Notes under the pieces: model-generated | What the model saw: only the letters and a program-made list of their open reading frames with translations | Databases searched by the model: none | Told to the model about the DNA's origin: nothing | Position numbers and translations under genes: made by a program | DNA from: Octopus bimaculoides | Taxonomy: Eukaryota | Direction: 5' to 3' | DNA length: 64,000 nucleotides | Assembly: GCF_001194135.2 (NCBI RefSeq) | Contig: NC_068983.1 | Coordinates: 72,876,203 to 72,940,202, forward strand | Part shown: piece by piece, positions 17,915 to 64,000 of the stretch | Position numbering within the stretch: the first letter of the stretch is position 1 | Layout: each line of letters opens with the position of its first letter

Positions 17915-17945
<31 letters not shown>

Positions 17946-23900: not shown

Positions 23901-24908
23901 TGATTACCCTAACCACTAATCCATGCTCAGATAAAGAGAAATAATATTAAGCGCAGGAGTGGCTGTGTGGTAAGTAGCTTGCTTACCAACCACACGGTTC
24001 TGGGTTCATTCCCACTGCATGGCACCTTGGGCAAGTGTCTTATACTATAGCCTCAGGCCGACCAAAGCCTTGTGTGTGGATTTGGTAGACGGAAACTGAA
24101 AGAAGCCCGCCGTATATATGTTTGTGTGTCTGTGTTTGTCCCCCCAACATCGCTTGACAACCGATGGTGGTGTGTTTACGTCCCCGTAACTTAGCGGTTC
24201 GGCAAAAGAGACCGATAGAATAAGTACTAGGCTTCCAAAGAATAAGTCCTGGGGTCGATTTGCTCGACTAAAGGCAGTGCCCCAGTATGGCCGCAGTCAA
24301 ATGACTGAAACAAGTAAAAGAGTATCAGGTGCAAGGGAGTTAACAAATATTGCCTTGATATCTCTGTAAGCATAGAAGGTGAGAAACATCTGAAAAAAAA
24401 AAATGACATGTCCAAAGAAGTAGCAGGTATTAAGATAATTTCTGTAGCTAGATTTTCAACTACTTCATTACATGAACTGTGATCATTGTCAAATTGAAGA
24501 AATTGAATTTTATTATAAGAACTATCATTAACCTCATCTATTTGTCATAGATTTTGTTATATATTGTATCACTCTTAAAAAAGAATTATTATATCTGAGC
24601 CTGACTCCAAAACTATTGCTTATTGCAATTTGAGTTATTGAAATAAACTTGTAAAGTTGGATGCTCTTATTATACCATGGAACAGGAATGATGTAGATAT
24701 CAGTTACTCTGTCTCATATATATATATATATCTTTTATCTTTTTCATTCATCAGACTGCAGCCATGCCTTGAAATGTTTTAGCTGAATAAATCAACTCCA
24801 GTACTTTTTTTTTGTTATGCCTGGTATTTATTCAAACCATCTCTTGCCAAACCGCTAAGTTGCAGGAATGTATTGTCAAGCTGTGGTGGGAGACAAACAC
24901 AGACACAA

Positions 24909-25086: not shown

Positions 25087-26240
25087 ATATATATGTATGT
25101 ATCTATCTATACACACACACACATCATCATCATCATCATTTAACATCCCCTTTTCCAAGCTGGCATGGGTTGAATGGTTTGACAAGAACAGATGAGCCAG
25201 ATGATGATGATTTTATATATATACTAGACTACCCATGATCCAATCGTTCAAGGTACCTGTGGTCCGATTCATGCAAAACTGGTTTTATTCCATTTGTATT
25301 CATATTTCAATGATACCTTGTGTTCACAGTAAAGGGCAATAACTCCAGGTTTCACTGCTTAAATTTGTGGAAACAAACCCCCCAAAAATGCACATCTCTG
25401 GAATCCATGGTCCGATTTATACAAAACTTGTTTTATCCTGCTTGTATTCACATTTCAGGGATATCTTACTCTCAGAGTGTTTTCTCATTATGCGCTGGTT
25501 TGGCTGTATTAAATTACACAAGCAAGCAATCACAGACTTTTAGTATTATATAGATATCTATAATAATAAATGCAAAAGTGAATGTCTGTGTCATACTTTT
25601 TCAACTTTACTCCTCCGACCCCCTTCTCTCACTATTCAGTAGCACTTCTACTATTCCTCATGCTTTACCCCTCTCTCCTCTCACTATTCAATTACACTTC
25701 TACTATTCCTCATGCTTTACCCCTTTCTTACTATTCAATGACACTTCTAGCTGTATCAAGTAATTTAACCATAACACGTGTTTCATAATATTTAAACTGA
25801 AATATGTATTGAACCCACTCTCTCATACAATATTACTTCTCATAACTCTCTACCATAAAAATGTTGGAAACTTAGTATTTTTTCAGATATTGATAAAATT
25901 TGTTGGACCTATTTGTATGCCATCGGCCATCAGAGCTATGGAAACTTAATGCATTCCAACTGCATGAAAATAGATTTGACTAATTTTATTATTACCTTAA
26001 AAAATACTAATTCTACTCTCTAAAAAAAGTTTTTTTCTTAATCCTAACATTTTGGAAAAAATATTTCTCTAGGTGCAGGAGTGTCTGTGTGGTAAGTAGC
26101 TTGCTTACCAACCACATGGTTCCAGGTTCAGTTCCACTGCATGGCACCATGGGCAAGTGTCTTCTACTATAGCTTTGGGCCGACCAAAGCCTTGTGAGTG
26201 GATTTGGTAGACAGAAACTGAAAGAAGCCCGTCATATATA

Positions 26241-26281
<41 letters not shown>

Positions 26282-41200: not shown

Positions 41201-44200
41201 TTTGTTAAAGAGTGTTGTATTCAAATTTTTGGATACTATTGTGAAACCATGGTACAATGATAACTAGAATCATAATATCATAAACGAAGTGTGCTGAAAA
41301 GTTCCTGACTTTAAGGGTATAGCGAAAGGTCTGGTTGGTGGCTCAACCTTCCAAGTTCTTTTACAGGGCTTAGAAAAACTGAAGGACTGCTGCAATAAGT
41401 GTGTGAATCTGAGAAGGAAATATGTTGGATAAAATCATAATTAACTGATCTTCCTGTATTTTCTTTTACCCAAAGCAAGGAACCTTTTAGCACCCCCTCG
41501 TGTATGTGTATATATGTGTGTGTGTGCAGCACTATTCGTGTGGAATATATGTATATATATGCATACACACACACATATATACTTTCTTATCTAATTTCAG
41601 CCTCAACTGAAATCCATCAAAGGCCTAACAAATCTGAACGTAATAAGACTAATGGTCATTCAGAATATCCAAACAATATTGCTGTAGTCAATTCACAGCA
41701 GAGTTCTGTAAGTACTAGTCCTGTTGGCTCTCCAGCAAATGACCTCAAAGAAGACAAAATTTTATTAGCTAAAAAACTTCTGCACCCTGTAAGCCCGCAG
41801 CTGTCATCTAAATGCATGATAGAAGAACTTGGAGAATCTGATAAGTTGAAAGAACTCGAGATAGAAAGGGCAGACTTTACTTCAACTAAACCTAACTTTG
41901 TCAACCCTACTTGTTTGTCTGAGTGGGGCTCGTGCAATGCAGACCTGACGACCAAGAATTCACATGAACGATCAAATGGATTGAGAGAATCTGCCAGTGA
42001 GTCTGGTTATTCTGTTAGCAGTCCCATTTCTCCAAGGTCTCCTTCAATTGTAAATGGTTATGATCAGAATGAAAATCAATCAGTGGATTATGGTTACCAA
42101 CATCTAGAAGATAAATTACAATTTCAGGTAAGCTGTTTTCAGAGCTTCAATGTTACTTTGAGAAAATTTTATCATTTGACATTGTAGACATGTTATTTCT
42201 GACATCAGTTTTCTAAATGTTCAATGAGTATAAAAATTTTACTTCTTGCATTAGTTGTTGAAAACTTGTTTTAATAATTTTTGAGTGTAAGGTAGTGAGC
42301 TTGCAGAATCGTTAGCGTGCCAGGTAAAATGCTTAGCAACATTTCGTCCATCTTTCTTCATCATCATCATTTAACGTCTGCTTTCCATGCTAGCATGGGT
42401 TGGACGATTTGACTGAGGACTGGTGAACCAGATGGCTGCACCAGGCTCCAATCTGATCTGGCAGAGTTTCTACAACTGGATGCCCTTCCTAACGCCAACC
42501 GCTCCGAGAGTGTAGTGGGTGCTTTTATGTGCCACTGGCACAAGGGCCAGTCAAGCGGTACTGGCAACGGCCACGCTCAAAATGGTGTATTTTATGTGCC
42601 ACCTGCACNNNNNNNNNNNNNNNNNNNNNNNNNNNNNNNNNNNNNNNNNNNNNNNNNNNNNNNNNNNNNNNNNNNNNNNNNNNNNNNNNNNNNNNNNNNN
42701 NNNNNNNNNNNNNNNNNNNNNNNNNNNNNNNNNNNNNNNNNNNNNNNNNNNNNNNNNNNNNNNNNNNNNNNNNNNNNNNNNNNNNNNNNNNNNNNNNNNN
42801 NNNNNNNNNNNNNNNNNNNNNNNNNNNNNNNNNNNNNNNNNNNNNNNNNNNNNNNNNNNNNNNNNNNNNNNNNNNNNNNNNNNNNNNNNNNNNNNNNNNN
42901 NNNNNNNNNNNNNNNNNNNNNNNNNNNNNNNNCGCAAGCGGAGTTTAGTGTCCAATGAAGGAAGATATGCATAAGTGGGCTGGCTACACCCCTGGCAGAG
43001 GCTTTGGATTTAGGTCTCACTTGGCTTGCCGGGTCTTCTCACGCACAGCATATTTCCAAAGGTCTTGGTCAAAAGTCATCGCCTTGGTGAGGCCCAATGT
43101 TCGAAGGTCATGCCTCACCACCTCATCCCAGGTCTTCCTGGGCCTACCTCTTCCACAGGTTCCCTCAACTGCTAGGGTGCTTTATGTTCTGAATTTGAAT
43201 TCCACTGGGGTCAACTTCGCCTTTCATCCTTTTGGAGCTTGATAAAAGGAATACCAGTTGAACATTGGGATTGATATAATCAACTTAGCCCCTCCCACAA
43301 AATTACTGGCCTTGTGCCAAAATTTGAGACCTATAATTTCTGTGTGTTATGTAATTATTTTTAACACTGTCATAAATCCATAAAATTTAGAGGCAGTTTC
43401 AGTCATTTAAAATGATTCCAATATTTGACTGGTACTTATTTTATTGACATGTAAATGATGAAAGATAAAATCAGATTCAGCAGAATTGGAACCTAGAAGC
43501 TAAAGTTATGCAACTAAATACTGTTTCTGTCACTCATCACCCTTGCTTTTACCATTCATGTATGATATGGCAGTGTTTCTTTCTTACAGAACAATACTCC
43601 TTAAAATCATTTTGTCTTACCCATCTGATCTAAAGACAGACTGAAAATAGCTGTAACATGTTACATCACTTGGTCCACAATCTGTTTTAAGTTGCCAACC
43701 ACCTTAAATAAATTCCAGTTATTGCCATATAAGAATAGCAAAATGGATACTTTCTTACCTATCATTTTGTATTCTCATAACCATTTTATGAGGGAGAGTT
43801 TGTTTTGTTACTGGACCTATGTATTTGATAAAATAATTTCATGCTATAAAGTAATTCAATCATCTTTTCTTTTACTTTTTTTTTACCATTTTCAATGTTT
43901 TAACAGCAATTTTCCCATACTAGTATGGTTTGGGATGGGTCTGCATATAGTGTAGTATCACTTGTTTAAATTTTTTTCCATATCTTCTGTGGGGCCTAGC
44001 ATCTTTATGATCTCATCAGTTCTTCCCGTGTCTTACTTGATGTTTAAAGAATACCCTCCACCAACATTAATTTGTATCATATATATTAACACTACAGGCA
44101 TTTCTCCAGTTCACATCAGCTGATGACATTAATGTCCAGTTCTGTCAGTTCATTCTTGTTCTACCTATCAACCATTTGTTGTTAAAGTGACTGAAGAGAA

Positions 44201-47025: not shown

Positions 47026-50000
47026 CCAAGGAACCCTACTTCCATTCTGAGTAACTATATGTTACTGTAAATACACTTATATTAAATATTTGTTAACTTG
47101 TATAACTCCACCTAGGTCCTAAGTGAACATGTCTGTTTTTAAAGGCTATCCAACTTTGATATCCTGTATTTCTTTTCAAGAATCGTGTATCTGGAGTCAC
47201 ATTAATGTGCCTTTGCATGTATCTGTGTGATTAAAATGATAGGGAAATTTAGCCGCTGTTTCTAGCAAGTTGAATGACCATGTATCTTCTTTGTTGGCTA
47301 GGAAGCTCTGTTATCGCATCAAACAAAAGGCCATAATTACCTATATGTATGTAAAAAGCCATCAAGTAACCTCAACGTTTTAATATAGTGTAGATACTAA
47401 TGTCTTACAAAATGACTCAAAAGTCCCTCTTAGCATTAATATAAACAAGTTAACAAACTAAGTCAATTGAGGTCATTTGAACTTCTTTTGTATGTATTCT
47501 GCTCTCTGTTCCACCCTCATACTTTACACCTTCTCACTATACCCTTTACCCACCTCCATACTGCATTCATTAACCCCAACCAATTAAACTGTATTACTGT
47601 TTTATTGTGCTAGTTTTGGGACAATGAATACTCTCTCACATTTTGATGATGGTATTTCTCTAAAATATTTTTTTTTTAAATACATAAATGTGTCACTTTC
47701 TAACCACATGAATTTGATTCAATCCAACTGCATGGTATCTTAAGCAAGTGCCTTCTACTATAGCCCCTGACTGATCAAAGCTTTGTAAATAAATTTGGTA
47801 GAAAGAAGTTCATAGTATGTATGTATATTATGTAATGTAGCACAGCACAACATAATGTAATGTGATGTGTGTTTGTGTCTCTGTCTTTACATCATGTGAT
47901 AGTTGTAAGAGAGTATTGCTATCATTGATTTTTCAGTCTTCTGTAAAAATGTTTGGCTGAGGGAAAAATAACATCTTGCTTGGAAACAAGTATGGATTGG
48001 TGGCAGGAAGAGCATTTGGCCAAAGAAAATCTGCTTCTATGATTTCCATCTGATCCATACAAGCATGGAAAAGTAGATGTTAAACTTTGTTGTTGTTGGC
48101 ACTCCGTCGCTTACGACGTCGAGGGTTCCAGTTAATCTGATCAACTGCACGGCCTGCTCGTGAAATTAACGTGCAAGTGGCTGAGCACTCCACAGACACA
48201 TGTACCCTTAATGTAGTTCTCGGGGATATTCAGCGTGACACAGCTGACCCTTTGAATTACAGGCACAACAGAAAGTAAGAGTGAGAGAAAGTTGTGGTGG
48301 AAGAGTACACCAGGGTTCCCCACCATCCCCTGCCAGAGCCTCGTGGAGATTTAGGTGTTTTCGCTCAATAAACACTCACAACACCCGGTCTGGGAATCGA
48401 AACCGCGATCCTATGACCCCGAGTCCGCTGCCCTAACCACTGGGCCATTGCGCCTCCACTGATGTTAAACTTACATACATATACATATATATATATATAT
48501 ATAATTTACAAGATTCAATATGTTCTAAACATTCAAAAGGAACAGTAACTGCTTCAGTGTCACTGGTCAAGAAAAGCCTGCAAAGATCATGAACTCTTCT
48601 CCTATCTTCAAACGCAGCTTGTTATATATATATATATATACATACACACACACACAAATATATATAAATACACAACAAAATAACAAAAAGTGTATTAAAA
48701 ATATGACAAAACCATAAAAATAAAAGTTTTATAGCTCATGTAAATGCTAGAAAGACTTCTAAATCATCCTGTACATTTTCTCATTGTCTGTGTTATTTTA
48801 GTTACTGTAATTCGTCAGATCTTCTTTAGATGCAAATTCTCAGATACTTTGGTGAAAAACAAGCTGCTATGTAAATAATTTAAATATTAATTTCATTTAA
48901 CAATCACAAATTTTCCAGCCTTCTTTCCTGAAAGGAAGACAAATGTTTATACGTTTCAGCTTCATTACACAGCTTCACTCAAATTTATTTTTCTTTGTTC
49001 TTAATGTATTTATCTGAAACTATTTCAGAGAAATTGATAAAAGCAGTTGTATCTTTCCTACAAAATACCAACCACTCAAGGCACCAGGTAACTTTTCTAA
49101 TTTTATTTCTTCTATGTTTCTCCCAATATTACTAACTTAACAATTATATTTGCCATTCAGTAAATTGAATTTGTGGCTGAATTGTAGCATTCATGCCTCT
49201 CACAATGGTATTAACTAATCTAGTGAAAAGACTCCAACATCACATTTCTTTTCCCAAGAAGATTATTATTATCATTTGTGTTAGTTTACAGAATTCATCA
49301 TCATCACCATCATTTAACATCCATTTACCAAGCTGGTATAGGTAGGATGGCTTGACAGAACTGGCAAGCTGCAAGGTTGCGTTGAGTGAGCTCCAATGAA
49401 ATATGAACGAATATATCAAAGCAATGGTATGCATTGGGATTTCTGATACAGCCTTGTTATACAATCTACCCACAACCATCCAGTTGATTTTTTTAATCTT
49501 GGAATGTGACAGTTAAGTGAATTGCCAGGAGACTAATCTATTTGCAGAAGAACTCTTTTTTTTTTCTTTTACTTGTTTCAGTCATTTGACTGCGGCCATG
49601 CTGGAGCACCGCCTTTAGTCGAGCAAATCGACCCCGGGACTTATTCTTTGTAAGCCTAGTACTTATTCTATCGGTCTCTTTTGCCGAACTGCGCTAAGTG
49701 ACGGGGGACATAAACACACCAGCATCGGTTGTCAAGCAATGCTAGGGGGACAAACACAGACACATATACACATATATATACATATATACGATGGGCTTCT
49801 TTCAGTTTCCGTCTACCAAATCCACTCACAAGGCTTTGGTCGGCCCGAGGCTATAGTAGAAGACACTTGCCCAAGATGCCATGCAGTGGGACTAAACCCG
49901 GAACCATGTGGTTGGTAAGCAAGCTACTTACCACACAGCCACTACTGCACCTATTCATAATTTCATTAGTACAGTACAAGGACCTATTTCCCTTCCCTAC

Positions 50001-50737: not shown

Positions 50738-51882
50738 AATATTTTTGATTATTCTTTTTAAAGCCAAAACAATGCCAGTTATAAAAATAATGTCAATGGT
50801 TTTACCAAGTATTTCAGGGTTAAGACCCCTTCTTCAGGAAATCTTTGGAGAAAAGGTGTTGTTAGATGGTTTCTCTCTCTTTCACTGCATGAAATGTGTT
50901 AATACAAACTTACTGTAATACTACTTAATGGTAGGAAGGAAAACAAAAACAAACAATATCAATTCAGTAACTACTTTATATTTTTCAGAAATCATCAATG
51001 TAATCCATGTTATCCCATCAGGGATATCAATTAAAAAGACCTTTCTTTTGGATCATGGCCGGTTACATATGGAATCTGTGAAACAGTCTTTTGGTTTGAA
51101 TACCATTGAGCTTTACATTGGTGAGAAATCTTTCCTCATCATATTTTGAGAATACAATAAAGTAATAACATTAATTTAATCTATTGTAATTGTAATGTGG
51201 ATATTGATTAACTTTTTTCCTATTTAACTCAGTTCATTGTAATCGTATTTTTACAAGTATAACAAAGATCTCCTGGGTTTTTAACTTGCATTTATTTTAT
51301 CATTAACATCATGATCCCTGTACTATAAGCATGTGGCTCAAGTGTGTATCAAGGTTATGTTGGTTCAGTACTAAAACACTTATCTACTATTTCCCTTAGA
51401 TGGGTTAATCACTACCACATTGAGCTAGAAATTTGTTACAAGTAGTATTCTATGAGAGACAGGTTGTTGTAGGGAAGGGAAAAGAAAGAGCCCTAAAGAT
51501 TCTGGCAAATGTGTAGATTTGTCTGCACTACCCAACCCATAATCTGCATAGCAAAAGTGATCTAATTGGTGTAAATGTATTGTTAAAGCTCACTCTCATT
51601 AACACACATTATATCACCAGTTTTCTTTTCTTTTTTTCAGATGGTGTTCCTGTTATTGTCAGTGCTAACATTGATGGCTATATTCCACTGAAATTCGACC
51701 CCAATTCTACACTGTTCATTAGTGGTATCACATCTCCAGCTCAGGAGGATAGTGTATCAATATCATCATTAGCATCATCTGCTGTCTTACCTCAGAGCCC
51801 AATTAATGAGAGTAAACCTATTACAGACTTAACAGTTACTGGGGCTCTGACTTCCATCAAAGGGAAAGCCACATCATGTTAG
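1..51882 (+). CDS. WDCP: WD repeat and coiled-coil-containing protein (WDCP/C2orf44 ortholog), 5'-partial, 14 coding exons in window (~661 aa)
   Basis: Exons 1-102, 12775-12889, 13323-13395, 15812-15879, 21330-21442, 28069-28166, 29501-29623, 31605-31703, 32541-32730, 41601-42127, 46163-46209, 49029-49087, 50989-51120 and 51641-51882 all have GT-AG boundaries and compatible phases, giving one ORF. Motifs match recalled human WDCP in the same order: ALPQGCLWNP~ILPQGCVWHP; GKISCGAWSEDGLKLVVCVG~GRIHCACWTQDGLRLVVAVG; IKGINTPDLLHF~IPGILVPDLIAF; HSRPKGVC~TERPKGIC; KTFLLDHGRLHMESVKQSFGLNTIEL~[39 protein letters not shown]~LSADSEGFIPLTF. Confidence 0.92.
378..452 (+). CDS. Candidate alternative cassette exon of WDCP (25 codons, GENEGSSAVVAFLLKGSPMTTDFQL)
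   Basis: Acceptor ctctttatcAG at 376-377 and donor GTTAGT at 453. It is 75 bp, phase 1/1 and stop-free, but has no counterpart in the recalled vertebrate protein. Confidence 0.45.
703..1005 (-). mobile_element. tRNA-derived SINE family A (CORE-like accttgggcaagt motif), degenerate
   Basis: Reverse-strand match to the intact copy at 23951-24323. Confidence 0.75.
1230..1626 (+). mobile_element. SINE family A
   Basis: tRNA-like head (ggttcagtcccactgc), internal (TG)n, tail ...atgactgaaa...gtaaaaga. Confidence 0.8.
2607..2958 (+). mobile_element. SINE family A, 5'-truncated; assembly gap in its internal (TA)n
   Basis: Core and tail match the family. Confidence 0.75.
4240..4940 (+). mobile_element. 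Three head-to-tail SINE family B copies separated by (TAT)n
   Basis: Repeated gagctggcagaat...ttagc...ctgagttcaaa...ccttgtgcc units. Confidence 0.8.
7218..7510 (+). mobile_element. Degraded CR1/L2-like LINE 3' fragment
   Basis: LLESFPAHVFSKSIDLQQFELN resembles the recalled LWNSLPxxVFPxxxDLxxFKxxVN terminus of CR1-group RT ORFs. Confidence 0.45.
7800..8120 (+). mobile_element. Degraded RTE-like reverse transcriptase fragment
   Basis: EKIQKFCHLG and CLEVVDSLYYL resemble the LEVVDxFxYLG motif; the frame is broken. Confidence 0.35.
11856..12284 (-). mobile_element. RTE-type LINE 3' end or RTE-tailed SINE, with assembly gap
   Basis: (GAT)n tail on the minus strand: ...gcatggaaagcggacgttaaacgatgatg; inserted in (TA)n. 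Confidence 0.8.
12775..12889 (+). CDS. WDCP: WDCP exon: GCLWNPHRELLCILSREQIRFFYRHGKIRGVYSIPPLE
   Basis: Pyrimidine tract plus AG, donor GTAAAT, phase 1/2; WD40-type CxWxP motif. Confidence 0.92.
13323..13395 (+). CDS. WDCP: WDCP exon: SGKISCGAWSEDGLKLVVCVGSAIL
   Basis: ttttaacAG acceptor, GTAAGT donor, phase 2/0. Confidence 0.93.
14190..14557 (+). mobile_element. SINE family A
   Basis: Head, core and tail match the family; further copies at ~15293-15600 and ~15993-16140. Confidence 0.75.
15812..15879 (+). CDS. WDCP: WDCP exon: IYNWRSIDGVISEFDTNVWKIP(E)
   Basis: tttttcAG acceptor, GTAAGT donor, phase 0/2. Confidence 0.9.
16207..16290. repeat. (TA)n microsatellite
   Basis: Long pure TA run; one of many TA/CA/CT/AAT/CAT microsatellites in the window. 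Confidence 0.95.
16314..16918 (-). mobile_element. 5'-truncated RTE-type LINE 3' region with ~63-bp internal tandem repeats
   Basis: Minus strand carries degenerate sequence resembling the RTE ORF C-terminus (GRPxxTWDEVV-like), then 3 tandem units, then a (GAT)n tail. Confidence 0.75.
16919..17320 (-). mobile_element. Non-LTR retrotransposon AP-endonuclease fragment (CR1/L2/Jockey-like)
   Basis: ORF 16873-17316 (-): ...IALVETHL...YAILRTDR...GSAVYI...IVICNTYGPP, typical apurinic endonuclease motifs. Confidence 0.85.
17534..17700 (+). mobile_element. SINE family A, 5' half
   Basis: aggcataggagtggctgtgtg ... gaaactgaaagaagccc. Confidence 0.8.
17703..18110 (-). mobile_element. SINE family A, full length, low divergence
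   Basis: Reverse complement of the 23951-24323 type sequence. Confidence 0.9.
18820..20264. mobile_element. TIR-bounded DNA transposon remnant carrying a degraded transposase N-terminus (Chapaev3-like)
   Basis: Perfect 23-bp inverted repeat tagttaaactgattcacaaaatc, plus a subterminal inverted match ttttagccaat. Region 19826-19980 (+) encodes frameshifted MPKNCINIANNFCYICG... and CYVHYFDCKVGDQDK, recalled as typical of Chapaev3-like transposases. Confidence 0.65.
20703..21010 (-). mobile_element. RTE-type 3' fragment
   Basis: Near-identical to the 11856, 62370 and 63826 copies; degenerate copies at ~3239, 25120, 27335, 45815 and 49297. Confidence 0.8.
21330..21442 (+). CDS. WDCP: WDCP exon: ELKGTVTAITSMQENLFACAAEVPLESLCKTKDMFVVP
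   Basis: tttctAG acceptor, GTAAGT donor, phase 2/1; AAEVPLESLC resembles ATELPLDKIC. Confidence 0.92.
21628..22008. repeat. ~380-bp imperfect palindrome (MITE-like or foldback) in a WDCP intron
   Basis: Arms share gcacattcaaactca, tcatggagaaaatttctc and tgtagacaaatggtataaatacacc in inverted orientation. Confidence 0.85.
23951..24323 (+). mobile_element. SINE family A, full length, low divergence
   Basis: gcgcaggagtggctgtgtggtaagtagc ... accttgggcaagtg ... atgactgaaacaagtaaaagagt; older copy at ~23215-23600 and a minus copy at ~24730-25030. Confidence 0.9.
25626..25750. repeat. ~52-bp tandem repeat, about 2.5 units
   Basis: ctctcactattca..cacttctactattcctcatgctttacccct is repeated. Confidence 0.8.
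26071..26510 (+). mobile_element. SINE family A, full length
   Basis: Same structure with an internal TA/TG microsatellite. Confidence 0.9.
28069..28166 (+). CDS. WDCP: WDCP exon (variable linker): EPNKVNSYSNDNEKQMLETTNLNKLMNLKRSSE
   Basis: Strong acceptor ctttctttccatttcAG; donor GTAAAC chosen because phase 1/0 fits the flanking exons. Confidence 0.8.
28260..28740 (+). mobile_element. Two tandem SINE family B copies separated by (TAT/TAC)n
   Basis: Same unit as at 4240-4940; a similar cluster lies at ~44500-44950. Confidence 0.8.
29501..29623 (+). CDS. WDCP: WDCP exon: CDVDNQSQLVVIRVKENMKDPEFLIRTSIKGINTPDLLHFQ
   Basis: tttgcAG acceptor, GTTTGT donor, phase 0/0; conserved G-I-x-x-P-D-L motif. 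Confidence 0.92.
31605..31703 (+). CDS. WDCP: WDCP exon: TLKQVLIIGSNIQTSLQLFNFAKDFKLIKLANV
   Basis: Poly-T tract plus cAG, donor GTAGGT, phase 0/0. Confidence 0.9.
32541..32730 (+). CDS. WDCP: WDCP exon: ELETHSRPKGVCSLPPEFSTNSSNGNMLIMLGKRSETSPSIFSTSTESKYELWLQCFSLDNAQ
   Basis: ctttgtAG acceptor, GTAAGT donor, phase 0/1; RPKG(V/I)C motif. Confidence 0.93.
32773..32979. mobile_element. piggyBac-type MITE
   Basis: TTAA|CCCTTT ... AAAGGG|TTAA; related partial copies at ~583-700, ~9985-10235 and ~36700-36925. Confidence 0.75.
33800..34090 (-). mobile_element. SINE family A, partial
   Basis: Reverse-strand core and head match. Confidence 0.75.
34198..35017. mobile_element. 820-bp non-autonomous TIR DNA transposon with 8-bp TSD and internal telomere-like repeats
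   Basis: Ends GGA(T/C)CTTTGTGATTTGACGGGCAACA are inverted, with imperfect TIRs of about 215 bp. Direct repeat GCTGCCTC at 34190-34197 and 35018-35025. Confidence 0.88.
34530..34612. repeat. Degenerate telomere-like (CCCTAA)n array inside the TIR element
   Basis: taaccctaaccccaaccctaaccctaactctaaaacctgaaccctaactctaaaacccgaaccctaaa. Confidence 0.85.
35246..35437. repeat. ~31-bp minisatellite (C7-9 ACTTCTTGTGCTATCACTTGTCT) with assembly gap
   Basis: At least 4 visible units flanking Ns at 35322-35370. Confidence 0.9.
36432..36665 (+). mobile_element. tRNA-derived SINE family B, well-preserved copy
   Basis: ggcgacgagctggcagaaacgttagc ... gttctgagttcaaattc (B-box-like) ... ggggtcgat; many degenerate copies elsewhere in the window. 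Confidence 0.8.
39196..39415. mobile_element. piggyBac-type MITE (220 bp)
   Basis: TTAA|CCCTTTCGTTAC ... GTAACGAAAGGG|TTAA. Confidence 0.88.
41284..41502. mobile_element. Tc1/mariner-type MITE
   Basis: Inverted ends acgaagtgtgctgaaaagttcct / aggaaccttttagcaccccctcg; shorter copy at ~9517-9650. Confidence 0.75.
41601..42127 (+). CDS. WDCP: WDCP large Ser/Asn-rich linker exon ending at the start of the coiled coil (...HLEDKLQFQ)
   Basis: atttcAG acceptor, GTAAGC donor, phase 1/0; lies within ORF 41504-42187. Confidence 0.88.
42353..43182 (-). mobile_element. RTE-type element (with gap) nested inside a SINE family B copy
   Basis: SINE B breaks at ...cgtccatcttt (42353) and resumes at ctttatgttctgaatttg (~43180). 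The gap 42609-42932 falls in the internal tandem array. Confidence 0.8.
46163..46209 (+). CDS. WDCP: WDCP coiled-coil exon: NNQIAELEKKIEELK(R)
   Basis: ttttacAG acceptor, GTTAAA donor, phase 0/2; heptad pattern. Confidence 0.85.
48088..48460 (-). mobile_element. tRNA-derived SINE family C, full length, 12-bp TSD
   Basis: TSD gatgttaaactt at 48076-48087 and 48461-48472; (CAA)n tail; tRNA-like head agtggaggcgcaatggcccagtggttagggcagcggactc. Confidence 0.9.
49029..49087 (+). CDS. WDCP: WDCP exon: REIDKSSCIFPTKYQPLKAP
   Basis: atttcAG acceptor, GTAACT donor, phase 2/1; resembles KKSSSVYP. Confidence 0.85.
49565..49953 (-). mobile_element. SINE family A, full length
   Basis: Reverse-strand match; partial copy at ~50530-50700. 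Confidence 0.9.
50989..51120 (+). CDS. WDCP: WDCP exon: EIINVIHVIPSGISIKKTFLLDHGRLHMESVKQSFGLNTIELYI
   Basis: tttttcAG acceptor, GTGAGA donor, phase 1/1; conserved C-terminal domain. Confidence 0.93.
51641..51882 (+). CDS. WDCP: WDCP terminal coding exon: [19 protein letters not shown]...GKATSC*
   Basis: Long pyrimidine tract plus cAG; stop TAG at 51880-51882. Confidence 0.93.
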
Positions 51883-52193: not shown

Positions 52194-52203
52194 AATAAAT
52201 AAA
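52194..52203 (+). terminator. Candidate polyadenylation signal(s) for WDCP (overlapping AATAAA)
   Basis: AATAAATAAA about 310 bp after the stop codon, followed by a T/GT-rich stretch; usage unverified. Confidence 0.45.
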
Positions 52204-53034
52204 TAACATAAAAACAAGCTGTTTTTGTTCCTATTAAATGCCATGTATTACTGCTTATACCATGAGATATGACATCAACATTGTTTAAACATCCACTTTT
52301 CTATGTTTGCATAAGTCAAATAAAACTTGTTGAAACAGATTTTCTATAGATGGATGCTCTTCTTGTCACCAATCCCCACCTGTTTCCAACAAAAGTATTA
52401 TCCCTTGTTCTTCAAACAATGAACAACTCAATGGCTAAACATGTTTTAATAGAAGATTGCAAACAAACAATATCAATTGAGTGAATAAATGTTGAAGCAA
52501 AGAAAAGACACACACATGCATACCATATATGTCCCATCATGCCTGACTACAAATCTTTCCAACTCACTCTCCACAACCGCCTAAAACTATACCTCTGCAC
52601 ACTTCCCTCTCAACCTACTATCAAACTCTCATTACTTATATTCAAGAAAACTCTTATATGGGAGAATTTACGAAAAAAACAACAGACAAAGACAGGTGGT
52701 GTAAACAACAAATGGATGTATTAGTTTAACACTCGGGAATAGAGAATGTCTTTGACGTTTCGAGCTACGCTCTTCAACTGAAAGGAACACAAAGAAATAA
52801 GGAGAAAAACAAGGAATATGTATGTTTACACACACACACATGATGAAAGAAAATAGGGATTAAATAAGCCATGGTGAATACCTCTTTAAGCATTCTCTGG
52901 AAATAGAACTTGTTCAGTTATAACAATCCATGTATCATTATTCTTTTCTTGTGACAGGTACAATTTGTAAATCCATGGTTGAACACCAATTAAATTGGGT
53001 GTATTAATCACAGTATATTAGAAAAAAAGCAAAG

Positions 53035-54452
53035 AATCCAGATGCATTATCATCAATTTATTTAGCTTACACATGTTTCAAACAGCATGGCACAACAGAA
53101 GTTATGCACTTTGCAGTATGCACATTTAATTAATCCTTCTGTTGGTTGACTAAATTGCGAGAGATACAGAGCATGTAGCTGCCATGCCATTCTTTTCAAT
53201 GCTTCTGCTAAATTTTGTATACATTGGGATAATGTAGAAAGGGTAATAAATTCCAAACTGCTGTCTCCATTTCATTGTCCATGTCCATATCATGGGCAAG
53301 GGGCAGTCTCTTTTTCTTCATTTAATGACAGTTACTACTTGTATGTATCTTGTTAGACTTGTAAGTTAATCTGGGATGTCATTAAGTGCAACTTAATTCA
53401 CAGCAGAAGACAATGAATTTAATAGAACTATAAAAGAAAATCAGTATCTAATAAAAATATGCTTTTCACTGTTGAAGGAATTTATATTAGGTAAAAATTA
53501 ATAAAAAAAGAATAAATTATACACTCACATATATACACACACACATGCATACACACTCTTACTTATCATGATACAAACTTACATCAAATTTGTAAAATTT
53601 TTTAAGAAAAGAATATCAAAACTTTAATTAAAGTGTAAGACAATGTTTGGAAACAGGAAACATTAAAATATGATATAGTGTCTCAACTATTAATTTTAAT
53701 ATCTGTCAGTTTGTGGATGATTTAGTACATTATTATATATGTTAATCCCTATAATGAAGTATATGCTACAGGGATTAACATAAAATATACTAATCATCTG
53801 CAAACTGACATATTAGAATTAATTGCTTTGTCAATGTATTATATTTTAATGTTTCCTCTTTCCCATTCTGTTTTAACCTTTGATTAAATTTTTAATATTT
53901 CTTGCTTTAGAATTATAGAAATTCATGATTAGTAAGAGTGTGTATGTATATATATAGATAGAGAGAGAGATGTGTTGGTGTGTGTATGCATTTATACAGT
54001 ATGTGTGTGTATGTATGACATTTCATTTTTATGTTATGTAATTCTACTTAATATAGATTACTCCAACAACCAAATGCATATTTTTCTTAGTAGATACTGA
54101 TTTTCTTTTATAGTTCTAGCAAATTCTTTTTGTCATTAAGATGCACTTAAGAGAGACTAAATTACAATTTTTTCTCGACAAGATATATCTATTAGTTGCC
54201 ATTAAATTAAGAGAAAGATACCACCTTTTGCCTGTGACATGGACACTGAATAATAAAATGGAGACAGTGGTCTGGAATTTATTGCTTGCAAACTCCTTCT
54301 ACATTATCTCAATGTATACAAAATTTAGCAGAAGCATTCTTTGTAAAGAATAGTCGATCAAATGAAAGGTTGATTAAATGCGCAATGCCAGCATTGTGCC
54401 ATGCTACTTGAAATGTGTAGGCTAAATAAATTGTTGATACTGCATCTTGATT
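53035..54452. repeat. Long imperfect inverted repeat / foldback palindrome (~700-bp arms, 13-nt loop at 53754-53766)
   Basis: The reverse complement of the left arm aligns colinearly with the right arm from the centre (gttaatccct/agggattaac) out to aatccagatgca/tgcatcttgatt. Shared blocks include tagaactataaaagaaaatcagtatcta and caatgtatacaaaatttagcagaagcatt. Confidence 0.93.
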
Positions 54453-55346
54453 TGTTATGGTAGTATAGTAATAACAGGTGAGAAAATGCTTTAAATGTTG
54501 TCAGTATAATGGTACAAAATGAAGAAAGATTGGTCAATGCTTAAAAGATTATTCTTTAAATACAGATGTATGGTATATGACATATTTCCAAATAGAAGTT
54601 TGTAAATCATTTCCAATACAAGACCTATAACAATACCAAAAGAAAAAAAGATTATCTATGTAAAAGGTTGTTTTTTTCCCTTTTTTTAAGGCAGATTTAA
54701 CAGGTACTTCTAGCCTCATAGATATTCCTTCATTCATGTATATGCTCACTTGTTAATGTTAATATCATAATAGCAAATGTATGTGCCATATGTGTTTGTG
54801 TGTTAGTATGTATGCAAGTATACATGTTTGTGTGTGAAAACACTACAATCTCAACAACTGTTCTTTAGAAACAATTGTATTATAAGCTTGTTTGTCTTTT
54901 TTTTTTTTAACTGAAACTAATTTATTTGAAAATTTCTTGTCAAAAGCAATCTATAGGCACAAAAAATTATACAATGTTTAATTAAGAAGCGAGATTAATT
55001 TTTTAAAATCGTTGCCCTCCCTATATTTCCCTTTAAATTAAAATTATTACATTTGTAAAGAGGGAAAAAACGTAAATCAATCTAGAATCACTATGTTACA
55101 ATGAATGATTTCAATATAAAATTACACTTTATTCACTTGAGTCACCTGAAGCAGAGCCACCAGACACCAATAATAACCGATTGTCAATTAAGGATCTGTT
55201 ATAAACCCATATTCTTGTTAATTTCAAAATAAAGATACTCCATAAAATTACTTAACCCTTTAGCATTCAGATTTCTCTGTCAAATGAAATGCTAATTTAT
55301 TCACATTGTTTTGAATTAATAATCATGCAGTACTTCTACCCTCACA

Positions 55347-55734
55347 CTCTTTTACTTGTTTCAGTCATTTGACTGTGGCCATGCTGGAGCACCGCCTTTA
55401 GTCAAGCAAATCGACCTCAGGACTTATTCTTTAGAAGCCTAGTACTTACTCTATCGGTCTCTTTTGCCGAACCGCTAAGTGACGGGGACGTAAACACACC
55501 AGCATCGGTTGCCAAGCAATGTTGGGGGGACAGACACACGAACATATACACACACACACATATATATATATGACGGGCCTCTTTCAGTTTCCGTCTACCA
55601 AATCCACTCACAAGGCTTTGGTTGGCCCGAGGCTATAGTATAAGACACTTGCCCAAGGTGCCATGCAGTGGGACTGAACCCGGAACCATGTAGTTGGTAA
55701 GCAAACTACTTACCACACAGCCACTCCTGCGCCT
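55347..55734 (-). mobile_element. SINE family A, full length
   Basis: Reverse-strand match. Confidence 0.9.
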
Positions 55735-56221
55735 ATAGATATTCCTTCATTCATGTACATGCTCATTTGTTCATGTTGATACCATAATAGCGAATGTATG
55801 TGCCATACATGTTTGTATGTTAGTATGTATACATGTTTGTGTCTGAGATTTCAATGATGTGATTGCTCTTTTTTAGAATAATATTGTAGGTTAAATGTGA
55901 GAGACTGGATCTGGTCAGTTTGAAGATAAAAAAAAAGGTAGATTATTTTGGCCAGATATAGCTGGTTTAAATGCTAAAAGGTTAACAGAAAAATAGTCTG
56001 TTGGGAATGGTTAAGCTGAAGGGAATTATTCAATCAGCTAAAAATTTGTTACCAACCATTCAAGTCATTGTGTGAGAAAGAGATGCTTTTAGTTTTTAAA
56101 CAGTGCTCTGCCATTACAAAACTACCCTCTCCATGTACTCTAATGTCAGACAAGTTTCTTTACTCCCCTCTGTGTACATTCATTTCTCAGACGGTGCAGT
56201 TGTTTGAGTTGTCTGCATTAA

Positions 56222-57354: not shown

Positions 57355-57846
57355 TTAAGCCTTAATACCAAAACAGTAATTTAGGTCATGTGTCTATGTA
57401 TTTGTAAAATTAAATATTCGTTCTTTTTCTTGGTATAAATACTGCAAAGCATTTTTTTCCCAATCCTTATAATTCTGCTGATCTACTGCCCATTAACATC
57501 GACAAAGAATGACTGGGGGAAAATTACCCAAGAATGCATTTGGCATCAAGGCTTTGGCATGTACTGATAAGATTATGTTACTGAGAAGATCAAAACATGT
57601 CAAGAGTTTTCACTATATTTAATAAAGATTAGATTCACTCACTGCTACATGTCCCGTTCATTTTTTCTTTTATTAATTTAGGAGTAGTTGTCCCTATGAG
57701 ATCCAAGGCTTGCTTGTTCACAATGCACCTACCCTTACTCACACACACCACTATATCAGATACCTTTCTCTTATTTCTCTACCCCAACAAGTAAGTGGAG
57801 ACCTTACTAGCTGGGGCAAAGAAAGTAATTTAGAAAGTTTTTTATT

Positions 57847-58233
57847 GGTGCAGGTGTAGCTGTGTAGTAAGAAGCTTACTTTCCAACCACATGCTTCCAG
57901 GTTCAGTCTCACAGTGTGGCACCTTGGGCAAGTGTCTTCTACTATAGCCTCGGGTCAACCAAAGCCTTGTGAGGGGATTTGGTAGACAAACTGGTAGAAG
58001 CCTTGTGTATATATATATAACTCTGTGTGTGTCTGTATACTACCCCCGCCACCCGCCAATCACCACTTGACAACCAGTGTTGGTGTTTATGTGTCTGCGA
58101 TTTAGGAGTTCAGCAAAAGAGATTGATAGAATAAGTATTAGGCTTAAAAAATAAGTCCTGAGGTCAATTTGACTAAAATCCTTCAAGGCAGTGCTCCAGC
58201 ATGGCCACAGTCAAATGACTGAAACAAAAAAGA
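57847..58233 (+). mobile_element. SINE family A
   Basis: Head, core and tail match the family. Confidence 0.85.
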
Positions 58234-60969: not shown

Positions 60970-62245
60970 TAATAATGGTTTGAAATTTTGGCACAGGGCC
61001 AGTAGCTTATTAGGGGAGGGGGAAGTCAATTACATTAACCTCAGTACTTGACTGATATTTGTTATCAACCCTGAAGTGATGAAAGGCAAAACCAACCTCA
61101 GAACATATAGACAAAATGCTTAGCATATCAATGATTGTGCCAGCCTGCTACCTTTTTAATAAAAATAATAATAATCCCTTTCTACTATAGACACAAGGCC
61201 AGAAATTTGGGGGGAGGGGGTAAATTAATTACACCAACCCCAATGTTCAACTGACCTCAAAAAGATGAAAGGCAAAGTCCACCTCAGTGGCATTTGAACC
61301 AAGAATGTAGAGACAGATGAAATGCTGCCAAGTATTTTGTCCAGCATACTAACCATCCTGCCAGCTTGCAGTCTTAAATAATCCTTAAATAATTACTTTG
61401 CCTTTCATCTTTTTGAGGTCGATGAAAGTCCCAGTTACACACTGGGGTTGATATCATCAACTAATCCCCTCCCTGCAATTTTCAAGCCTTACACCTTTGG
61501 TGGGAGGGGACTGGTTGATTACATTAACCCCAGTGTGTAACCGGTACTTGCATCAACCCAAAAGAGATGAAAGGTAAAGTGGACCTCAGTGGAATTTAAA
61601 GTCAGAACAGATGAAACACTGCTAAGCATTTTGTCTGGCATGTGAAGAATTCTGCCGGCTTGTGGCCTTTCACTACCTTAAATAATAGTAATAATACCTA
61701 AATACCAAATCTAATAATTTGTAAAAAGCGACCCTGTGAGACCCTTGATAATAGAATTAACAGGAGCAAGTAAGATCAAGAGCTCTGAGAAGTAAAATAT
61801 AACAATATTATTATTAATAAAAATAATTATAATAATAATAATCCTTTTTTACTTAAGGCACAAGGCCTGATATTTGGGGGGAGGGGAGTAGTTGATTATA
61901 TTGACCCCAGTATTTCACTGATACCTAATTTATCGACCCTGAAAGGATGAAAGACAAAGTCAATCCCGGTGGAATTTGAACTCAGAACATAGTGACAGGT
62001 AAAATACCACTAAGCATTTCATCCAGCATGTTAATTATAATAATAATAATAATGTTTCTAATTTAGGCACAAGGCCAGCAGTTTTGGGAAGAGAAGTTAG
62101 TTGATACTATTGACACATTAATTGACCAGTACTTTATTTTATAGACCCCCAAAAGGATGAAAAACAAAGTTGACCCTGGGAAGATTTGAACCCAGAATGT
62201 AAGGAATCAAAAGAAATATCACAAGGCATTTTGTCTGATGCAAGG
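60970..62245 (-). mobile_element. Cluster of ~5-6 SINE family B copies, mostly minus strand, with (AAT)n spacers
   Basis: Repeated ggcacaaggcc...ggggagggg...gatgaaaggcaaagt...ctcagaac units. Confidence 0.8.
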
Positions 62246-62625: not shown

Positions 62626-63653
62626 AGTTCATTATAATAATGTTACATCTTTCTGTGATGGTGATAATTACAGTAAATGTTCATTATATTTCATAAGTGG
62701 ACCTTTAAGATCATATCACTCGAGGTTGTTTTAATATTTTACTAACTCATTTAAATGATTTAGAAAATGTAAAACCTAAACAGCAACAGAGGAAAGGTTT
62801 CTGTTTGTACACTACTTTGTATTTATGCGTAAAAATGCAGCAACAGAACACACACTTCTTGAAACTTTATTTATGTTCCAATAACTTGTTACAATAAATG
62901 ATAACCCAAAGGTGTTCCAGCAATTTAATATCTATGCAATTTATATAAAGATTTTCTATTTTTTATTTAATGATTTTATATTAAATAATATTTATTGTAC
63001 AATTAATTGTTGTTTTTTAATTGAAAAAATTTACCAGCTCCCTAAATGTGGAATGTTCAACACATAAAACCCCAAAGACCATTTTGTAACGAAAGGTAAT
63101 ATAAAAAAAGGTTAACAAAGTTTTTTAAAAATTCCTATTTAAGCATTTGTTCTTCTATAACAGAACATAACCAAAAACTAATAAATAAATGATTTGGTAT
63201 AGTTTATCATTATAGATTATTATTTTCATTTCTCAATATCATTGTTAAAAGCATATAATTAACTTATTAAGCGCGAATTGTAGATAAACCTTCTTTCTTA
63301 AGTAATTCAATACAAAAAGTAAACAAAAATTCTATTATTTATTTGAAAGTTTTCAGAAAAGAAATTAATTAATTGAGATAACAGTCTTTTCCACTACAAG
63401 AGACAAACAAGATACAAAAAGCCAAATATTTATGAGATATAGCAAGAAACATAGAATTTCCAGTGTTGTAAACTTAGGAATTTAAAGGACCATTCGAAAA
63501 AAAAATTAATAAAAAATAAAAAATTCAAGGGTGGTGCTCAAGAAAGCAAAGTTATTTTTTAACATTCCAATTTATTACTAGTATCATTTTTGAATATGCT
63601 ACCTTCCTCATAGATAACCCTAAAGAAAGGTCAGTGCATTTTATAAACAAGAT

Positions 63654-63826
63654 AGGCGCAGGAGTGCCTGTGTGGTAAGTAGCTTGCTTACCAACCACAT
63701 GGTTCCGGGTTCAGTCCCACTGCGTGGCACCTTGGGCAAGTGTCTTCTACTATGGCCTCGGGCCGACCAAAGCCTTGTGAGTGGATTTGGTAGACGGAAA
63801 CTGAAAGAAGCCCATCGTATATATGT
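63654..63826 (+). mobile_element. SINE family A 5' half, interrupted at its microsatellite by an RTE-type element
   Basis: Near-consensus head and core, followed directly by (CAT)n. Confidence 0.85.
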
Positions 63827-64000
63827 ATCATCATCATCATCATCATCATCATCGTTTAACGTCCGCTTTCCATGCTAGCATGGGTTGGACGATTTGACTG
63901 AGGACTGGTGAAACCGGATGGCAACACCAGGCTCCAGTCTGATTTGGCAGAGTTTCTACAGCTGGATGCCCTTCCTAACGCCAACCACTCAGAGAGTGTA
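63826..64000 (-). mobile_element. RTE-type 3' fragment, runs off the window
   Basis: (CAT)n start followed by family sequence. Confidence 0.8.

What the first reader, a model, noticed from the sequence alone, without database searches (positions are those of the whole stretch)
53035..54452. 1.4-kb foldback palindrome with a 13-nt loop just downstream of WDCP: candidate long-hairpin RNA / ADAR-hyperediting or endo-siRNA locus
Seen in sequence: two ~700-bp arms are colinear reverse complements (roughly 70-80% identical by eye, with indels) all the way to a 13-nt loop (53754-53766, atgaagtatatgc). A CA/TG microsatellite sits at the mirrored position in both arms. It matches no SINE/LINE/MITE family in this window and has no recognisable TSD or transposase. 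It starts ~1.15 kb after the WDCP stop and ~830 bp after the proximal AATAAA. Established: coleoid cephalopods show very extensive A-to-I editing of dsRNA, and long imperfect hairpin transcripts yield endo-siRNAs in Drosophila (hpRNA pathway). Inference: if transcribed as an extended WDCP 3' UTR or an independent ncRNA, it would fold into a ~650-bp duplex able to affect editing, nuclear retention or small-RNA output. The mismatches I could read are mostly transitions and do not clearly favour G-U pairing on one strand, so strand and function are unresolved.
Basis: partly seen in the sequence, partly recalled or inferred. Interest (0 to 1): 0.8.

Follow-up and report, generated by a model that had tools for sequence, protein, structure and literature searches.

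The report
Old decayed 1.4-kb foldback repeat
The 1.4-kb inverted repeat is real and would fold into a long RNA hairpin if transcribed, but it looks like an old, neutrally decaying foldback repeat of a common kind, with no sign of a selected function.

Summary
Observation confirmed. Arms 53035-53753 and 53767-54452 are colinear reverse complements around a 13-nt loop. Aligned positions are 85% identical (69% counting gaps), and a CA/TG microsatellite sits at mirrored positions. Predicted RNA hairpin energy is -573 kcal/mol on the + strand and -542 on the - strand, against -289 +/- 10 for shuffles.

Nothing supports a function. The arms differ by 93 substitutions (52 transitions, 41 transversions) and 42 indel events. 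That is more indels per substitution than interspersed SINE-like copies of equal divergence in the same window. G:U-compatible mismatches show no strand bias (29 vs 23). No Rfam, Pfam or protein homology was found. There is no significant target-site duplication and no second copy in the 64 kb.

The 15% arm divergence rules out an assembly artefact. The first AATAAA after the putative WDCP stop gives a 3'UTR of about 320 nt, typical for octopus, ending about 830 nt before the palindrome.

Published small-RNA surveys find no endo-siRNA pathway in molluscs. Foldbacks that form dsRNA are very common in octopus, and several more lie in this window.

Best reading: a relic foldback-type DNA element, or a one-off inverted duplication, that ADAR would edit only passively if transcription reads through it. 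Genome-wide copy number, transcription and orthologous loci could not be tested here.

The parts
53035..53753 (.). Left arm of the foldback (719 nt)
   Evidence: colinear reverse complement of 53767-54452, 85% identity over 629 aligned positions.
53754..53766 (.). Central 13-nt spacer / loop (atgaagtatatgc), not itself clearly palindromic
   Evidence: pair I13: arms 53731-53753 and 53767-53789, 13 nt between them.
53767..54452 (.). Right arm of the foldback (686 nt)
   Evidence: Relative to the left arm it lacks a 37-nt, an 11-nt and a 9-nt segment, among 22 gap events in this row of the alignment.
53518..53556 (.). CA-rich microsatellite in the left arm
   Evidence: Tandem Repeats Finder. It aligns to the TG-rich tract of the right arm.
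53937..54017 (.). Mirrored TG-rich (plus GA) degenerate microsatellite in the right arm
   Evidence: Sequence and alignment. It was present before the duplication or belonged to the original palindromic unit.
53198..53244 (.). Best-preserved stretch of the duplex, pairing with 54292-54338 (47 nt, 94%); part of the 42-bp longest helix on the + strand
   Evidence: (pair I2). Mismatch density along the arms is not significantly heterogeneous (dispersion p = 0.20), so this stretch is within chance variation.
51641..51882 (+). Context: putative last coding exon of the upstream WDCP-like gene (acceptor ttttttcag|AT, stop TAG at 51880-51882)
   Evidence: Pfam WDCP (PF15390) gives weak, colinear hits to + strand ORFs at 13.2 kb and 32.5 kb. 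A distant orthologue of this exon exists in Logan contigs (63% aa identity).
52194..52199 (+). Context: first AATAAA after the stop, 836 nt before the palindrome; implies a 3'UTR of about 320 nt
   Evidence: The median octopus 3'UTR is 350-380 nt (PMC9699675).

Best explanation
This is a non-coding foldback (near-complete palindrome) that arose once and has since decayed without constraint. It lies in the DNA downstream of a WDCP-like gene.

Most likely origin (about 0.55): one copy of a palindromic, non-autonomous foldback-type DNA transposon. Its target-site duplication and terminal motifs are no longer recognisable. Otherwise (about 0.35): a one-off local inverted duplication, made for example by template switching or hairpin-primed repair.

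Shown here: the two arms have accumulated about 0.17 substitutions per site between them, plus 42 indels. These are spread evenly, with no strand-specific preservation of pairing.

Inferred: the locus has no selected RNA function. If Pol II reads through from WDCP or from a neighbouring unit, the RNA would fold back and ADAR would edit it promiscuously, as it does the very many other inverted-repeat duplexes in octopus transcripts. That would be a by-product, not a purpose.

The age is about 20-25 My on a published octopus TE calibration. This assumes the arms were identical at birth and that the window really is from an Octopus.

The confidence of 0.5 applies to the full statement including a TE origin. 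'Neutral relic, whatever its origin' is about 0.85.
For: The structure is real and far beyond chance.

The decay pattern looks neutral:
- 52 transitions and 41 transversions, K2P = 0.166.
- 42 indel events covering 147 columns, including a 37-nt one.
- Mismatches are evenly dispersed (p = 0.20) and G:U-compatible mismatches number 29 (+) vs 23 (-), p = 0.49.
- Indel events per substitution are 0.45. SINE-like pairs of similar divergence in the same window give 0.26-0.34. Duplex integrity is therefore not protected.

There is no coding or RNA-family signal. Pfam on all six frames is empty. Rfam gives only sub-threshold chance hits. A search of 1.84 billion protein representatives with the longest ORF gives only two spurious repeat-protein matches.

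The symmetric, sharp outer ends and short loop fit a single palindromic unit. Two independent insertions would not be expected to share both outer and inner ends.

Foldbacks and close inverted pairs are common in this window. Three smaller hairpins, a MITE-like element and two SINE-like inverted pairs were found.

Literature:
- DNA transposons make up about 12% of the O. bimaculoides genome, with an ancient burst. JC distances of 0.04-0.09 correspond to 11-25 Mya (PMC6279123).
- Octopus has an exceptionally high density of loci able to form long dsRNA and about 1.05 million hyper-edited sites. Palindromic repeats such as the frog Harbinger element are edited on their own (PMC5625713).
Against: Genome-wide copy number is unknown, so a TE origin is not demonstrated.
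- There is no significant target-site duplication. The best candidate, 9 nt with one mismatch, lies 14 and 9 nt outside the arms and is matched by 35% of shuffles.
- There is no recognisable superfamily terminal motif.
- There are no tandem subrepeats of the kind seen in classical Foldback elements.
- There is no second copy in the 64 kb.

Neutrality is inferred from one sequence. Without an orthologue, compensatory change cannot be assessed.

Fast-evolving hpRNA loci in flies also look imperfect, so imperfection alone does not exclude function.

The taxon (Octopus) was not verified here.
Confidence: 0.5

Rival explanations
1. One-off local inverted duplication. About 700 bp of ordinary intergenic DNA, already containing a CA microsatellite, was copied in inverted orientation right next to itself, leaving a spacer of about 13 nt. 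Possible mechanisms are replication template switching or hairpin-primed repair. It has decayed neutrally since. The functional conclusion is the same as in the best explanation; only the origin differs.
For: There is no target-site duplication above chance, no TE terminal motif, no transposase remnant and no other copy in the window. The spacer is short. The arm content looks like ordinary AT-rich intergenic DNA with a microsatellite.
Against: These are all absences of evidence. At about 8% decay per arm, a short TSD would usually be unrecognisable. 64 kb of a roughly 2.7-Gb genome only excludes very high copy numbers. TE-derived foldbacks are the commoner source of such structures in TE-rich genomes (prior knowledge; PMC5625713).
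Confidence: 0.35
2. Selected regulatory hairpin. The palindrome is part of an alternative long WDCP 3'UTR or an independent lncRNA. Its ADAR-edited duplex would control nuclear retention, stability or ADAR availability.
For: The duplex potential is very strong on both strands. It lies on the sense side, 1.15 kb downstream of the stop. Most octopus editing falls in introns and 3'UTR hairpins (PMC9699675).
Against: There is no signature of constraint on pairing. The + strand advantage of 31 kcal/mol rests on 29 vs 23 G:U-compatible mismatches (p = 0.49). The proximal PAS gives a 3'UTR of typical length that ends 836 nt upstream. Three AATAAA and three ATTAAA precede the palindrome, and four more AATAAA lie in the left arm. 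Such structures are extremely numerous in octopus, so the prior for any one being selected is low.
Confidence: 0.06
3. Drosophila-type hpRNA / endo-siRNA locus. The hairpin would be diced into 21-22-nt siRNAs that silence a target gene.
For: The only support is the architecture: a long inverted repeat with a short loop.
Against: A survey of 32 molluscs, with O. bimaculoides among the species whose small RNAs were sequenced, found no evidence of a dedicated endo-siRNA pathway (PMC12479628). The arms have no detectable homology to WDCP exons, to anything else in the window, or to any protein, so no target can be identified. No paper in the library links hpRNA with cephalopods.
Confidence: 0.02
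4. Assembly artefact: a chimeric foldback read or a mis-joined haplotype created a palindrome that does not exist in the genome.
For: The window comes from a gapped draft scaffold with four N runs.
Against: Artefactual foldbacks have near-identical arms. Here the arms differ at 15% of aligned positions and by 42 indels. The nearest N gap is about 10 kb away, at 42609-42932.
Confidence: 0.02

Closest known systems
Palindromic non-autonomous DNA transposons that fold back on themselves, e.g. the palindromic Harbinger-derived repeat of Xenopus tropicalis that is heavily hyper-edited (PMC5625713)
   Same: Nearly the whole unit is one inverted repeat with a short centre. It is non-coding. It would form dsRNA on its own when transcribed, without needing a neighbouring inverted copy.
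   Different: No family membership is shown. No TSD (TWA for Harbinger), no terminal motif, no other copies and no editing data are available. At 1.4 kb it is larger than typical MITEs.
Foldback (FB) / Mutator-Foldback transposons (Drosophila FB, Tetris, nematode Tm1; PMC4079207 and PMC3169594 listed, not read)
   Same: Very long terminal inverted repeats make up most of the element, with a short or no central region.
   Different: From my own knowledge, classical FB arms are built of tandem subrepeats and have 9-bp TSDs. Here no subrepeats exist apart from a microsatellite, and there is no significant TSD.
Inverted-repeat ADAR substrates in 3'UTRs and introns (inverted Alu pairs in human; inverted SINE pairs in octopus)
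   Same: Long imperfect intramolecular duplex next to a gene. If transcribed, promiscuous A-to-I hyper-editing is expected (PMC5625713, PMC9699675).
   Different: Those are two separate copies of a dispersed repeat, whereas this is a single self-complementary unit matching no repeat in the window. Transcription is unproven. A genuine inverted SINE-like pair lies just downstream at 55348-55737 / 57843-58233.
Drosophila hpRNA loci (endo-siRNA-generating long hairpins; own knowledge, Okamura/Czech/Kawamura 2008)
   Same: Genomic inverted repeat of several hundred bp with a short loop.
   Different: hpRNA arms derive from and target specific genes, and depend on a Dicer-2/AGO2 pathway. Here no target homology was found, and molluscs show no endo-siRNA pathway (PMC12479628).

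Membership tests
Foldback (FB-type) transposon | Long terminal inverted repeats forming most of the element | tested here: met
   Arms of 719 and 686 nt around a 13-nt centre.
Foldback (FB-type) transposon | Arms built of tandem subrepeats | tested here: not met
   TRF and the direct-repeat search find only the CA microsatellite.
Foldback (FB-type) transposon / any DNA transposon | Target-site duplication flanking the termini | tested here: inconclusive
   The best direct repeat (9 nt, 1 mismatch, not adjacent to the arms) is reached by 706 of 2000 shuffles. At about 8% decay per side, a short TSD would often be lost.
Foldback / MITE family | Multiple dispersed copies in the genome | not testable with these tools
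   No second copy in the 64-kb window. No cephalopod genome is available. Exact-core scans of metagenome, viral and prokaryote collections give 0 hits.
MITE | Miniature size (usually under about 800 bp) | tested here: not met
   The element is 1418 bp.
hpRNA / endo-siRNA locus | Transcribed long inverted repeat | not testable with these tools
   Fold potential is shown. No expression data are available.
hpRNA / endo-siRNA locus | Arms homologous to a target gene | tested here: not met
   No similarity to window genes, to Pfam or to 1.84 billion protein representatives. A genome-wide nucleotide search was not possible.
hpRNA / endo-siRNA locus | Host has a dedicated siRNA Dicer/Ago pathway and endo-siRNAs | tested here: not met
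   From the literature only: no evidence of endo-siRNAs in a survey of 32 molluscs, with O. bimaculoides among the species whose small RNAs were sequenced (PMC12479628).
ADAR hyper-editing substrate | Long, nearly perfect intramolecular dsRNA | tested here: met
   528 cross-arm pairs, helices up to 42 bp, MFE z about -29.
ADAR hyper-editing substrate | Present in a transcript, with clustered A-to-G mismatches | not testable with these tools
   No RNA-seq access. The position is 836 nt beyond the proximal AATAAA.
Assembly-artefact palindrome | Near-identical arms | tested here: not met
   85% identity and 42 indel events.
Known RNA family (Rfam) | Match at or above the gathering score | tested here: not met
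   The best hit is osmY at 27 bits against a gathering score of 46.9, a bacterial sRNA and a chance match.

The most novel reading that the evidence does not exclude
The hairpin is carried by an alternative long WDCP 3'UTR or a separate lncRNA in some tissue, probably neural. ADAR hyper-edits it, and this has been co-opted for nuclear retention or dosage control of WDCP, or as an ADAR or dsRNA-sensor decoy. Alternatively, it yields Dicer products, which would reveal an endo-siRNA-like activity in a phylum where none has been detected.
Probability: 0.05. Interest if true: 0.55.

Novelty: new member of a known kind. Interest (0 to 1): 0.15.

Why it matters
As it stands it matters little. It is one more instance of the inverted-repeat DNA that makes octopus transcriptomes unusually rich in dsRNA and hyper-editing.

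It is a clean, large, single-unit example: about 500 bp of potential duplex within 1.2 kb of a gene end. That makes it a convenient test locus for three questions:
- How far does read-through transcription expose such structures to ADAR?
- Do molluscs dice long endogenous hairpins at all?
- How fast do long palindromes decay? Its indel load is higher than that of dispersed repeats of the same age. That could reflect palindrome-stimulated instability, or simply its AT-rich, low-complexity content.

Only conservation with compensatory changes, or regulated expression, would raise it above ordinary.

Tried and rejected
Routes to orthologous or same-species DNA:
- Exact-product look-ups of four window ORFs found nothing on record. 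Two ORFs lay inside the palindrome. The other two were a 227-aa exon-like ORF used as a positive control and the last-exon ORF.
- A homology search with the 41.5-kb exon gave no hit.
- A search with three concatenated exons gave one Logan cluster, P0003, at 63% aa identity.
- Its contigs L001-L004 align to the window only over 196 nt of the exon, at 72%. They come from a distant cephalopod and say nothing about the flank.

Dispersed copies: exact 25-26-nt cores that are identical in both arms were scanned against metagenome (twice), viral and prokaryote-genome collections, with 0 hits. This was expected, because none of these collections holds cephalopod genomes.

Coding ancestry:
- Pfam on six frames of 52900-54600 found nothing.
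- The 77-aa ORF at 54120-54350 was searched against 1.84 billion proteins. It gave two weak multi-stretch hits, one to a tandem-repeat ORF and one to an ankyrin-repeat protein. I judged both spurious.

Rfam gave only sub-threshold chance hits.

TSDs and ends:
- The TSD scan stayed at chance level.
- Reading the termini as hAT-like (CAG...) was rejected because the 8 bp on either side, aaagaatc and atttgtta, are not direct repeats (sequence).
- Empty-site reconstruction failed. The flanks match other window repeats only well away from the junctions.

Assembly artefact was rejected on arm divergence.

Pfam on three large unrelated ORFs (16.9 kb, 7.2 kb, 27.3 kb) found nothing.

Full report
**What is there**

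The sequence at 53035-54452 is a genuine foldback. A seeded repeat search returns a colinear series of inverted pairs. They run from the outermost (53035-53074 / 54413-54452, 90%) to the innermost (53731-53753 / 53767-53789), with 13 nt between them.

A global alignment of the left arm (719 nt) with the reverse complement of the right arm (686 nt) gives 536 matches, 93 mismatches and 147 gap columns. That is 85% identity at aligned positions and 69% over all columns. BLAST reports the self-inverted match at E = 3e-152.

The CA-rich microsatellite in the left arm (53518-53556) aligns with a degenerate TG/GA-rich tract in the right arm (about 53937-54017). The flanks outside 53035 and 54452 are not complementary, so the unit has sharp, symmetric ends.

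As RNA, the + strand folds to -573.4 kcal/mol and the - strand to -542.0. Thirty dinucleotide shuffles give -289.4 +/- 9.7. There are more than 500 cross-arm pairs, and uninterrupted helices reach 42 bp on + and 28 bp on -. The only correction is that transitions barely outnumber transversions (52 vs 41).

**Context**

Two + strand ORFs, at 13.2 kb and 32.5 kb, hit Pfam WDCP (PF15390). The hits are colinear (profile positions 154-178 and 383-427). Each is below the gathering score, but together they are consistent with a WDCP-like gene on the + strand.

The ORF ending at 51882 has a good splice acceptor (ttttttcag|AT at 51640/51641) and a TAG stop at 51880-51882. A Logan genomic contig from another cephalopod-like source encodes a 63%-identical version of it.

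The first AATAAA lies at 52194. That predicts a 3'UTR of about 320 nt, close to the median of 350-380 nt measured in octopus by FLAM-seq (PMC9699675).

An mRNA containing the whole hairpin would need a 3'UTR of about 2.6 kb. It would also have to skip three AATAAA and three ATTAAA hexamers before the palindrome and four more AATAAA inside the left arm. In 70% A+T sequence such hexamers occur at chance density, so this argument is only mild.

I could not verify the species.

**Is it under constraint?**

All internal evidence says no.
- The arms differ by K2P = 0.166, with 52 transitions, 41 transversions and 42 separate indel events, the largest being 37, 11, 9 and 8 nt.
- Mismatches are evenly spread along the arms (dispersion test p = 0.20).
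- Mismatches that would still pair as G:U number 29 for a + strand RNA and 23 for a - strand RNA (p = 0.49). The 31 kcal/mol advantage of the + strand is therefore noise.

As an internal neutral yardstick, I aligned nine pairs of the roughly 400-bp SINE-like repeat that litters this window. Pairs of comparable divergence (K = 0.14-0.16) show 0.26-0.34 indel events per substitution and ts/tv of 1.7-3.1. The palindrome arms show 0.45 and 1.27.

The duplex is thus being broken up at least as fast as dispersed junk of the same age. The excess of indels may reflect the AT-rich, low-complexity content or palindrome-associated instability. I did not separate these two causes.

**What is it made of?**

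- No Rfam family reaches threshold.
- No Pfam domain appears in any of the six frames.
- The longest ORF (77 aa) finds only two spurious repeat-protein matches among 1.84 billion representatives.
- Neither BLAST nor nhmmer finds another copy of the arm in the 64 kb, apart from microsatellite similarity.
- The arms are not derived from WDCP exons or from any other window sequence.
- The arms lack the tandem subrepeats of classical Foldback elements.
- The best candidate target-site duplication is AGTATATTA at 53012 and AGTATAGTA at 54462. It is not adjacent to the arms and is matched or beaten by 35% of shuffles.

**How ordinary is it?**

A minus-strand self-comparison of the window finds several other inverted structures:
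- three smaller self-complementary hairpins (61395-61580, 17440-17528, 18232-18322);
- a MITE-like element with terminal inverted repeats of about 115-120 nt (21625-22010);
- further close inverted pairs, including a SINE-like pair 2.1 kb apart just downstream of the palindrome (55348-55737 / 57843-58233).

The 1.4-kb unit is the largest, but it is one of many. This agrees with Porath et al. (PMC5625713). They found that octopus has an exceptionally high fraction of loci able to form long dsRNA (4.4e-3 of random 50-mers) and about 1.05 million hyper-edited sites. They also note that approximately palindromic repeats are edited on their own.

**Interpretation**

The 15% divergence and the many indels exclude an assembly artefact, which would give near-identical arms. 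Both the outer and the inner ends of the two arms coincide. That argues for a single event producing a palindromic unit, not two independent insertions.

Two origins remain, and I cannot separate them without the genome.
- A copy of a palindromic, non-autonomous foldback-type DNA transposon. I favour this at about 0.55, because DNA transposons make up about 12% of the O. bimaculoides genome with an ancient burst (PMC6279123), and because a short TSD would usually be unrecognisable after about 8% decay per side.
- A one-off local inverted duplication, at about 0.35.

On the calibration in PMC6279123 (distance 0.04-0.09 corresponds to 11-25 Mya), about 0.083 substitutions per arm corresponds to roughly 20-25 My. 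This assumes the arms were identical at birth.

- The endo-siRNA/hpRNA reading is disfavoured. A survey of 32 molluscs, with O. bimaculoides among the species whose small RNAs were sequenced, found no evidence of an endo-siRNA pathway (PMC12479628). No target homology exists. No paper in the library connects hpRNAs with cephalopods.
- The ADAR reading is plausible only in its weak form. If the region is transcribed, the duplex will be hyper-edited like countless others.
- A selected role is not excluded, but nothing supports it. I give it about 5%.

**What could not be done**

I could not obtain genome-wide copy number, orthologous loci, RNA-seq, editing data or small-RNA data. Attempts to reach related DNA through the protein and contig collections failed. 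The one exception was a distant orthologue of the last exon, whose flanks are unalignable.

**Verdict**

The structure is real and the observation correct, but the functional interpretation is unsupported. This is an ordinary, old foldback repeat of low interest. It would become interesting only if comparative or expression data show conservation of pairing or regulated transcription.

Noticed in passing
window 61395-61580: A second, smaller foldback: 84-nt arms (61395-61478 / 61497-61580), 82% complementary, 18-nt loop. A perfect 26-nt inverted match also links 61253-61278 to 61395-61420.
   Followed up: partly
window 21625-22010: MITE-like unit with terminal inverted repeats of about 115-120 nt (21625-21738 / 21892-22010, core 47 nt at 96%) around a centre of about 150 nt.
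   Followed up: no
window 17440-17528 and 18232-18322: Short hairpins: 37-nt arms at 92% with a 15-nt loop, and 35-nt arms at 83% with a 21-nt loop. They lie next to a head-to-head pair of SINE-like fragments (17518-17704 / 17938-18125).
   Followed up: no
window 55348-55737 and 57843-58233: Inverted pair of the roughly 400-bp SINE-like repeat (79%, 2.1 kb apart), just downstream of the palindrome. This is another potential dsRNA former if co-transcribed. Other copies of the family lie at 17702-18115, 23944-24325, 26061-26510, 49565-49964 and 63652-63828.
   Followed up: partly
window 2730-2739, 12082-12284, 35322-35370, 42609-42932: Runs of N, i.e. scaffold gaps. The window comes from a gapped draft assembly. 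One gap lies just after the large exon-like ORF at 41.5-42.2 kb.
   Followed up: no
window 41504-42187 (+): A 227-aa ORF rich in S and P that looks like a large coding exon of the WDCP-like gene. It has no Pfam hit and no homologue in the 5.8-billion-protein collection.
   Followed up: partly
L001-L004 (Logan contigs from ERR14857108, ERR12921340, ERR12921339, SRR9969974), positions 284-703: Genomic contigs from another species carry an orthologue of the putative last WDCP exon (63% aa, 72% nt over 196 nt), preceded by a similar polypyrimidine tract. Nothing outside the exon aligns to the window.
   Followed up: yes
window 54713-54837 and 55731-55846: Direct repeat of about 125 nt at 85% in the right flank. 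The left flank at 52272-52389 matches 47980-48096 (inverted) and 27334-27452. These are unclassified short dispersed repeats.
   Followed up: no
window 53035-54452 compared with the SINE-like pairs: The palindrome arms carry more indel events per substitution (0.45) and a lower ts/tv (1.27) than dispersed repeat pairs of the same divergence (0.26-0.34; 1.7-3.1). This could be palindrome-stimulated instability or a composition effect.
   Followed up: partly
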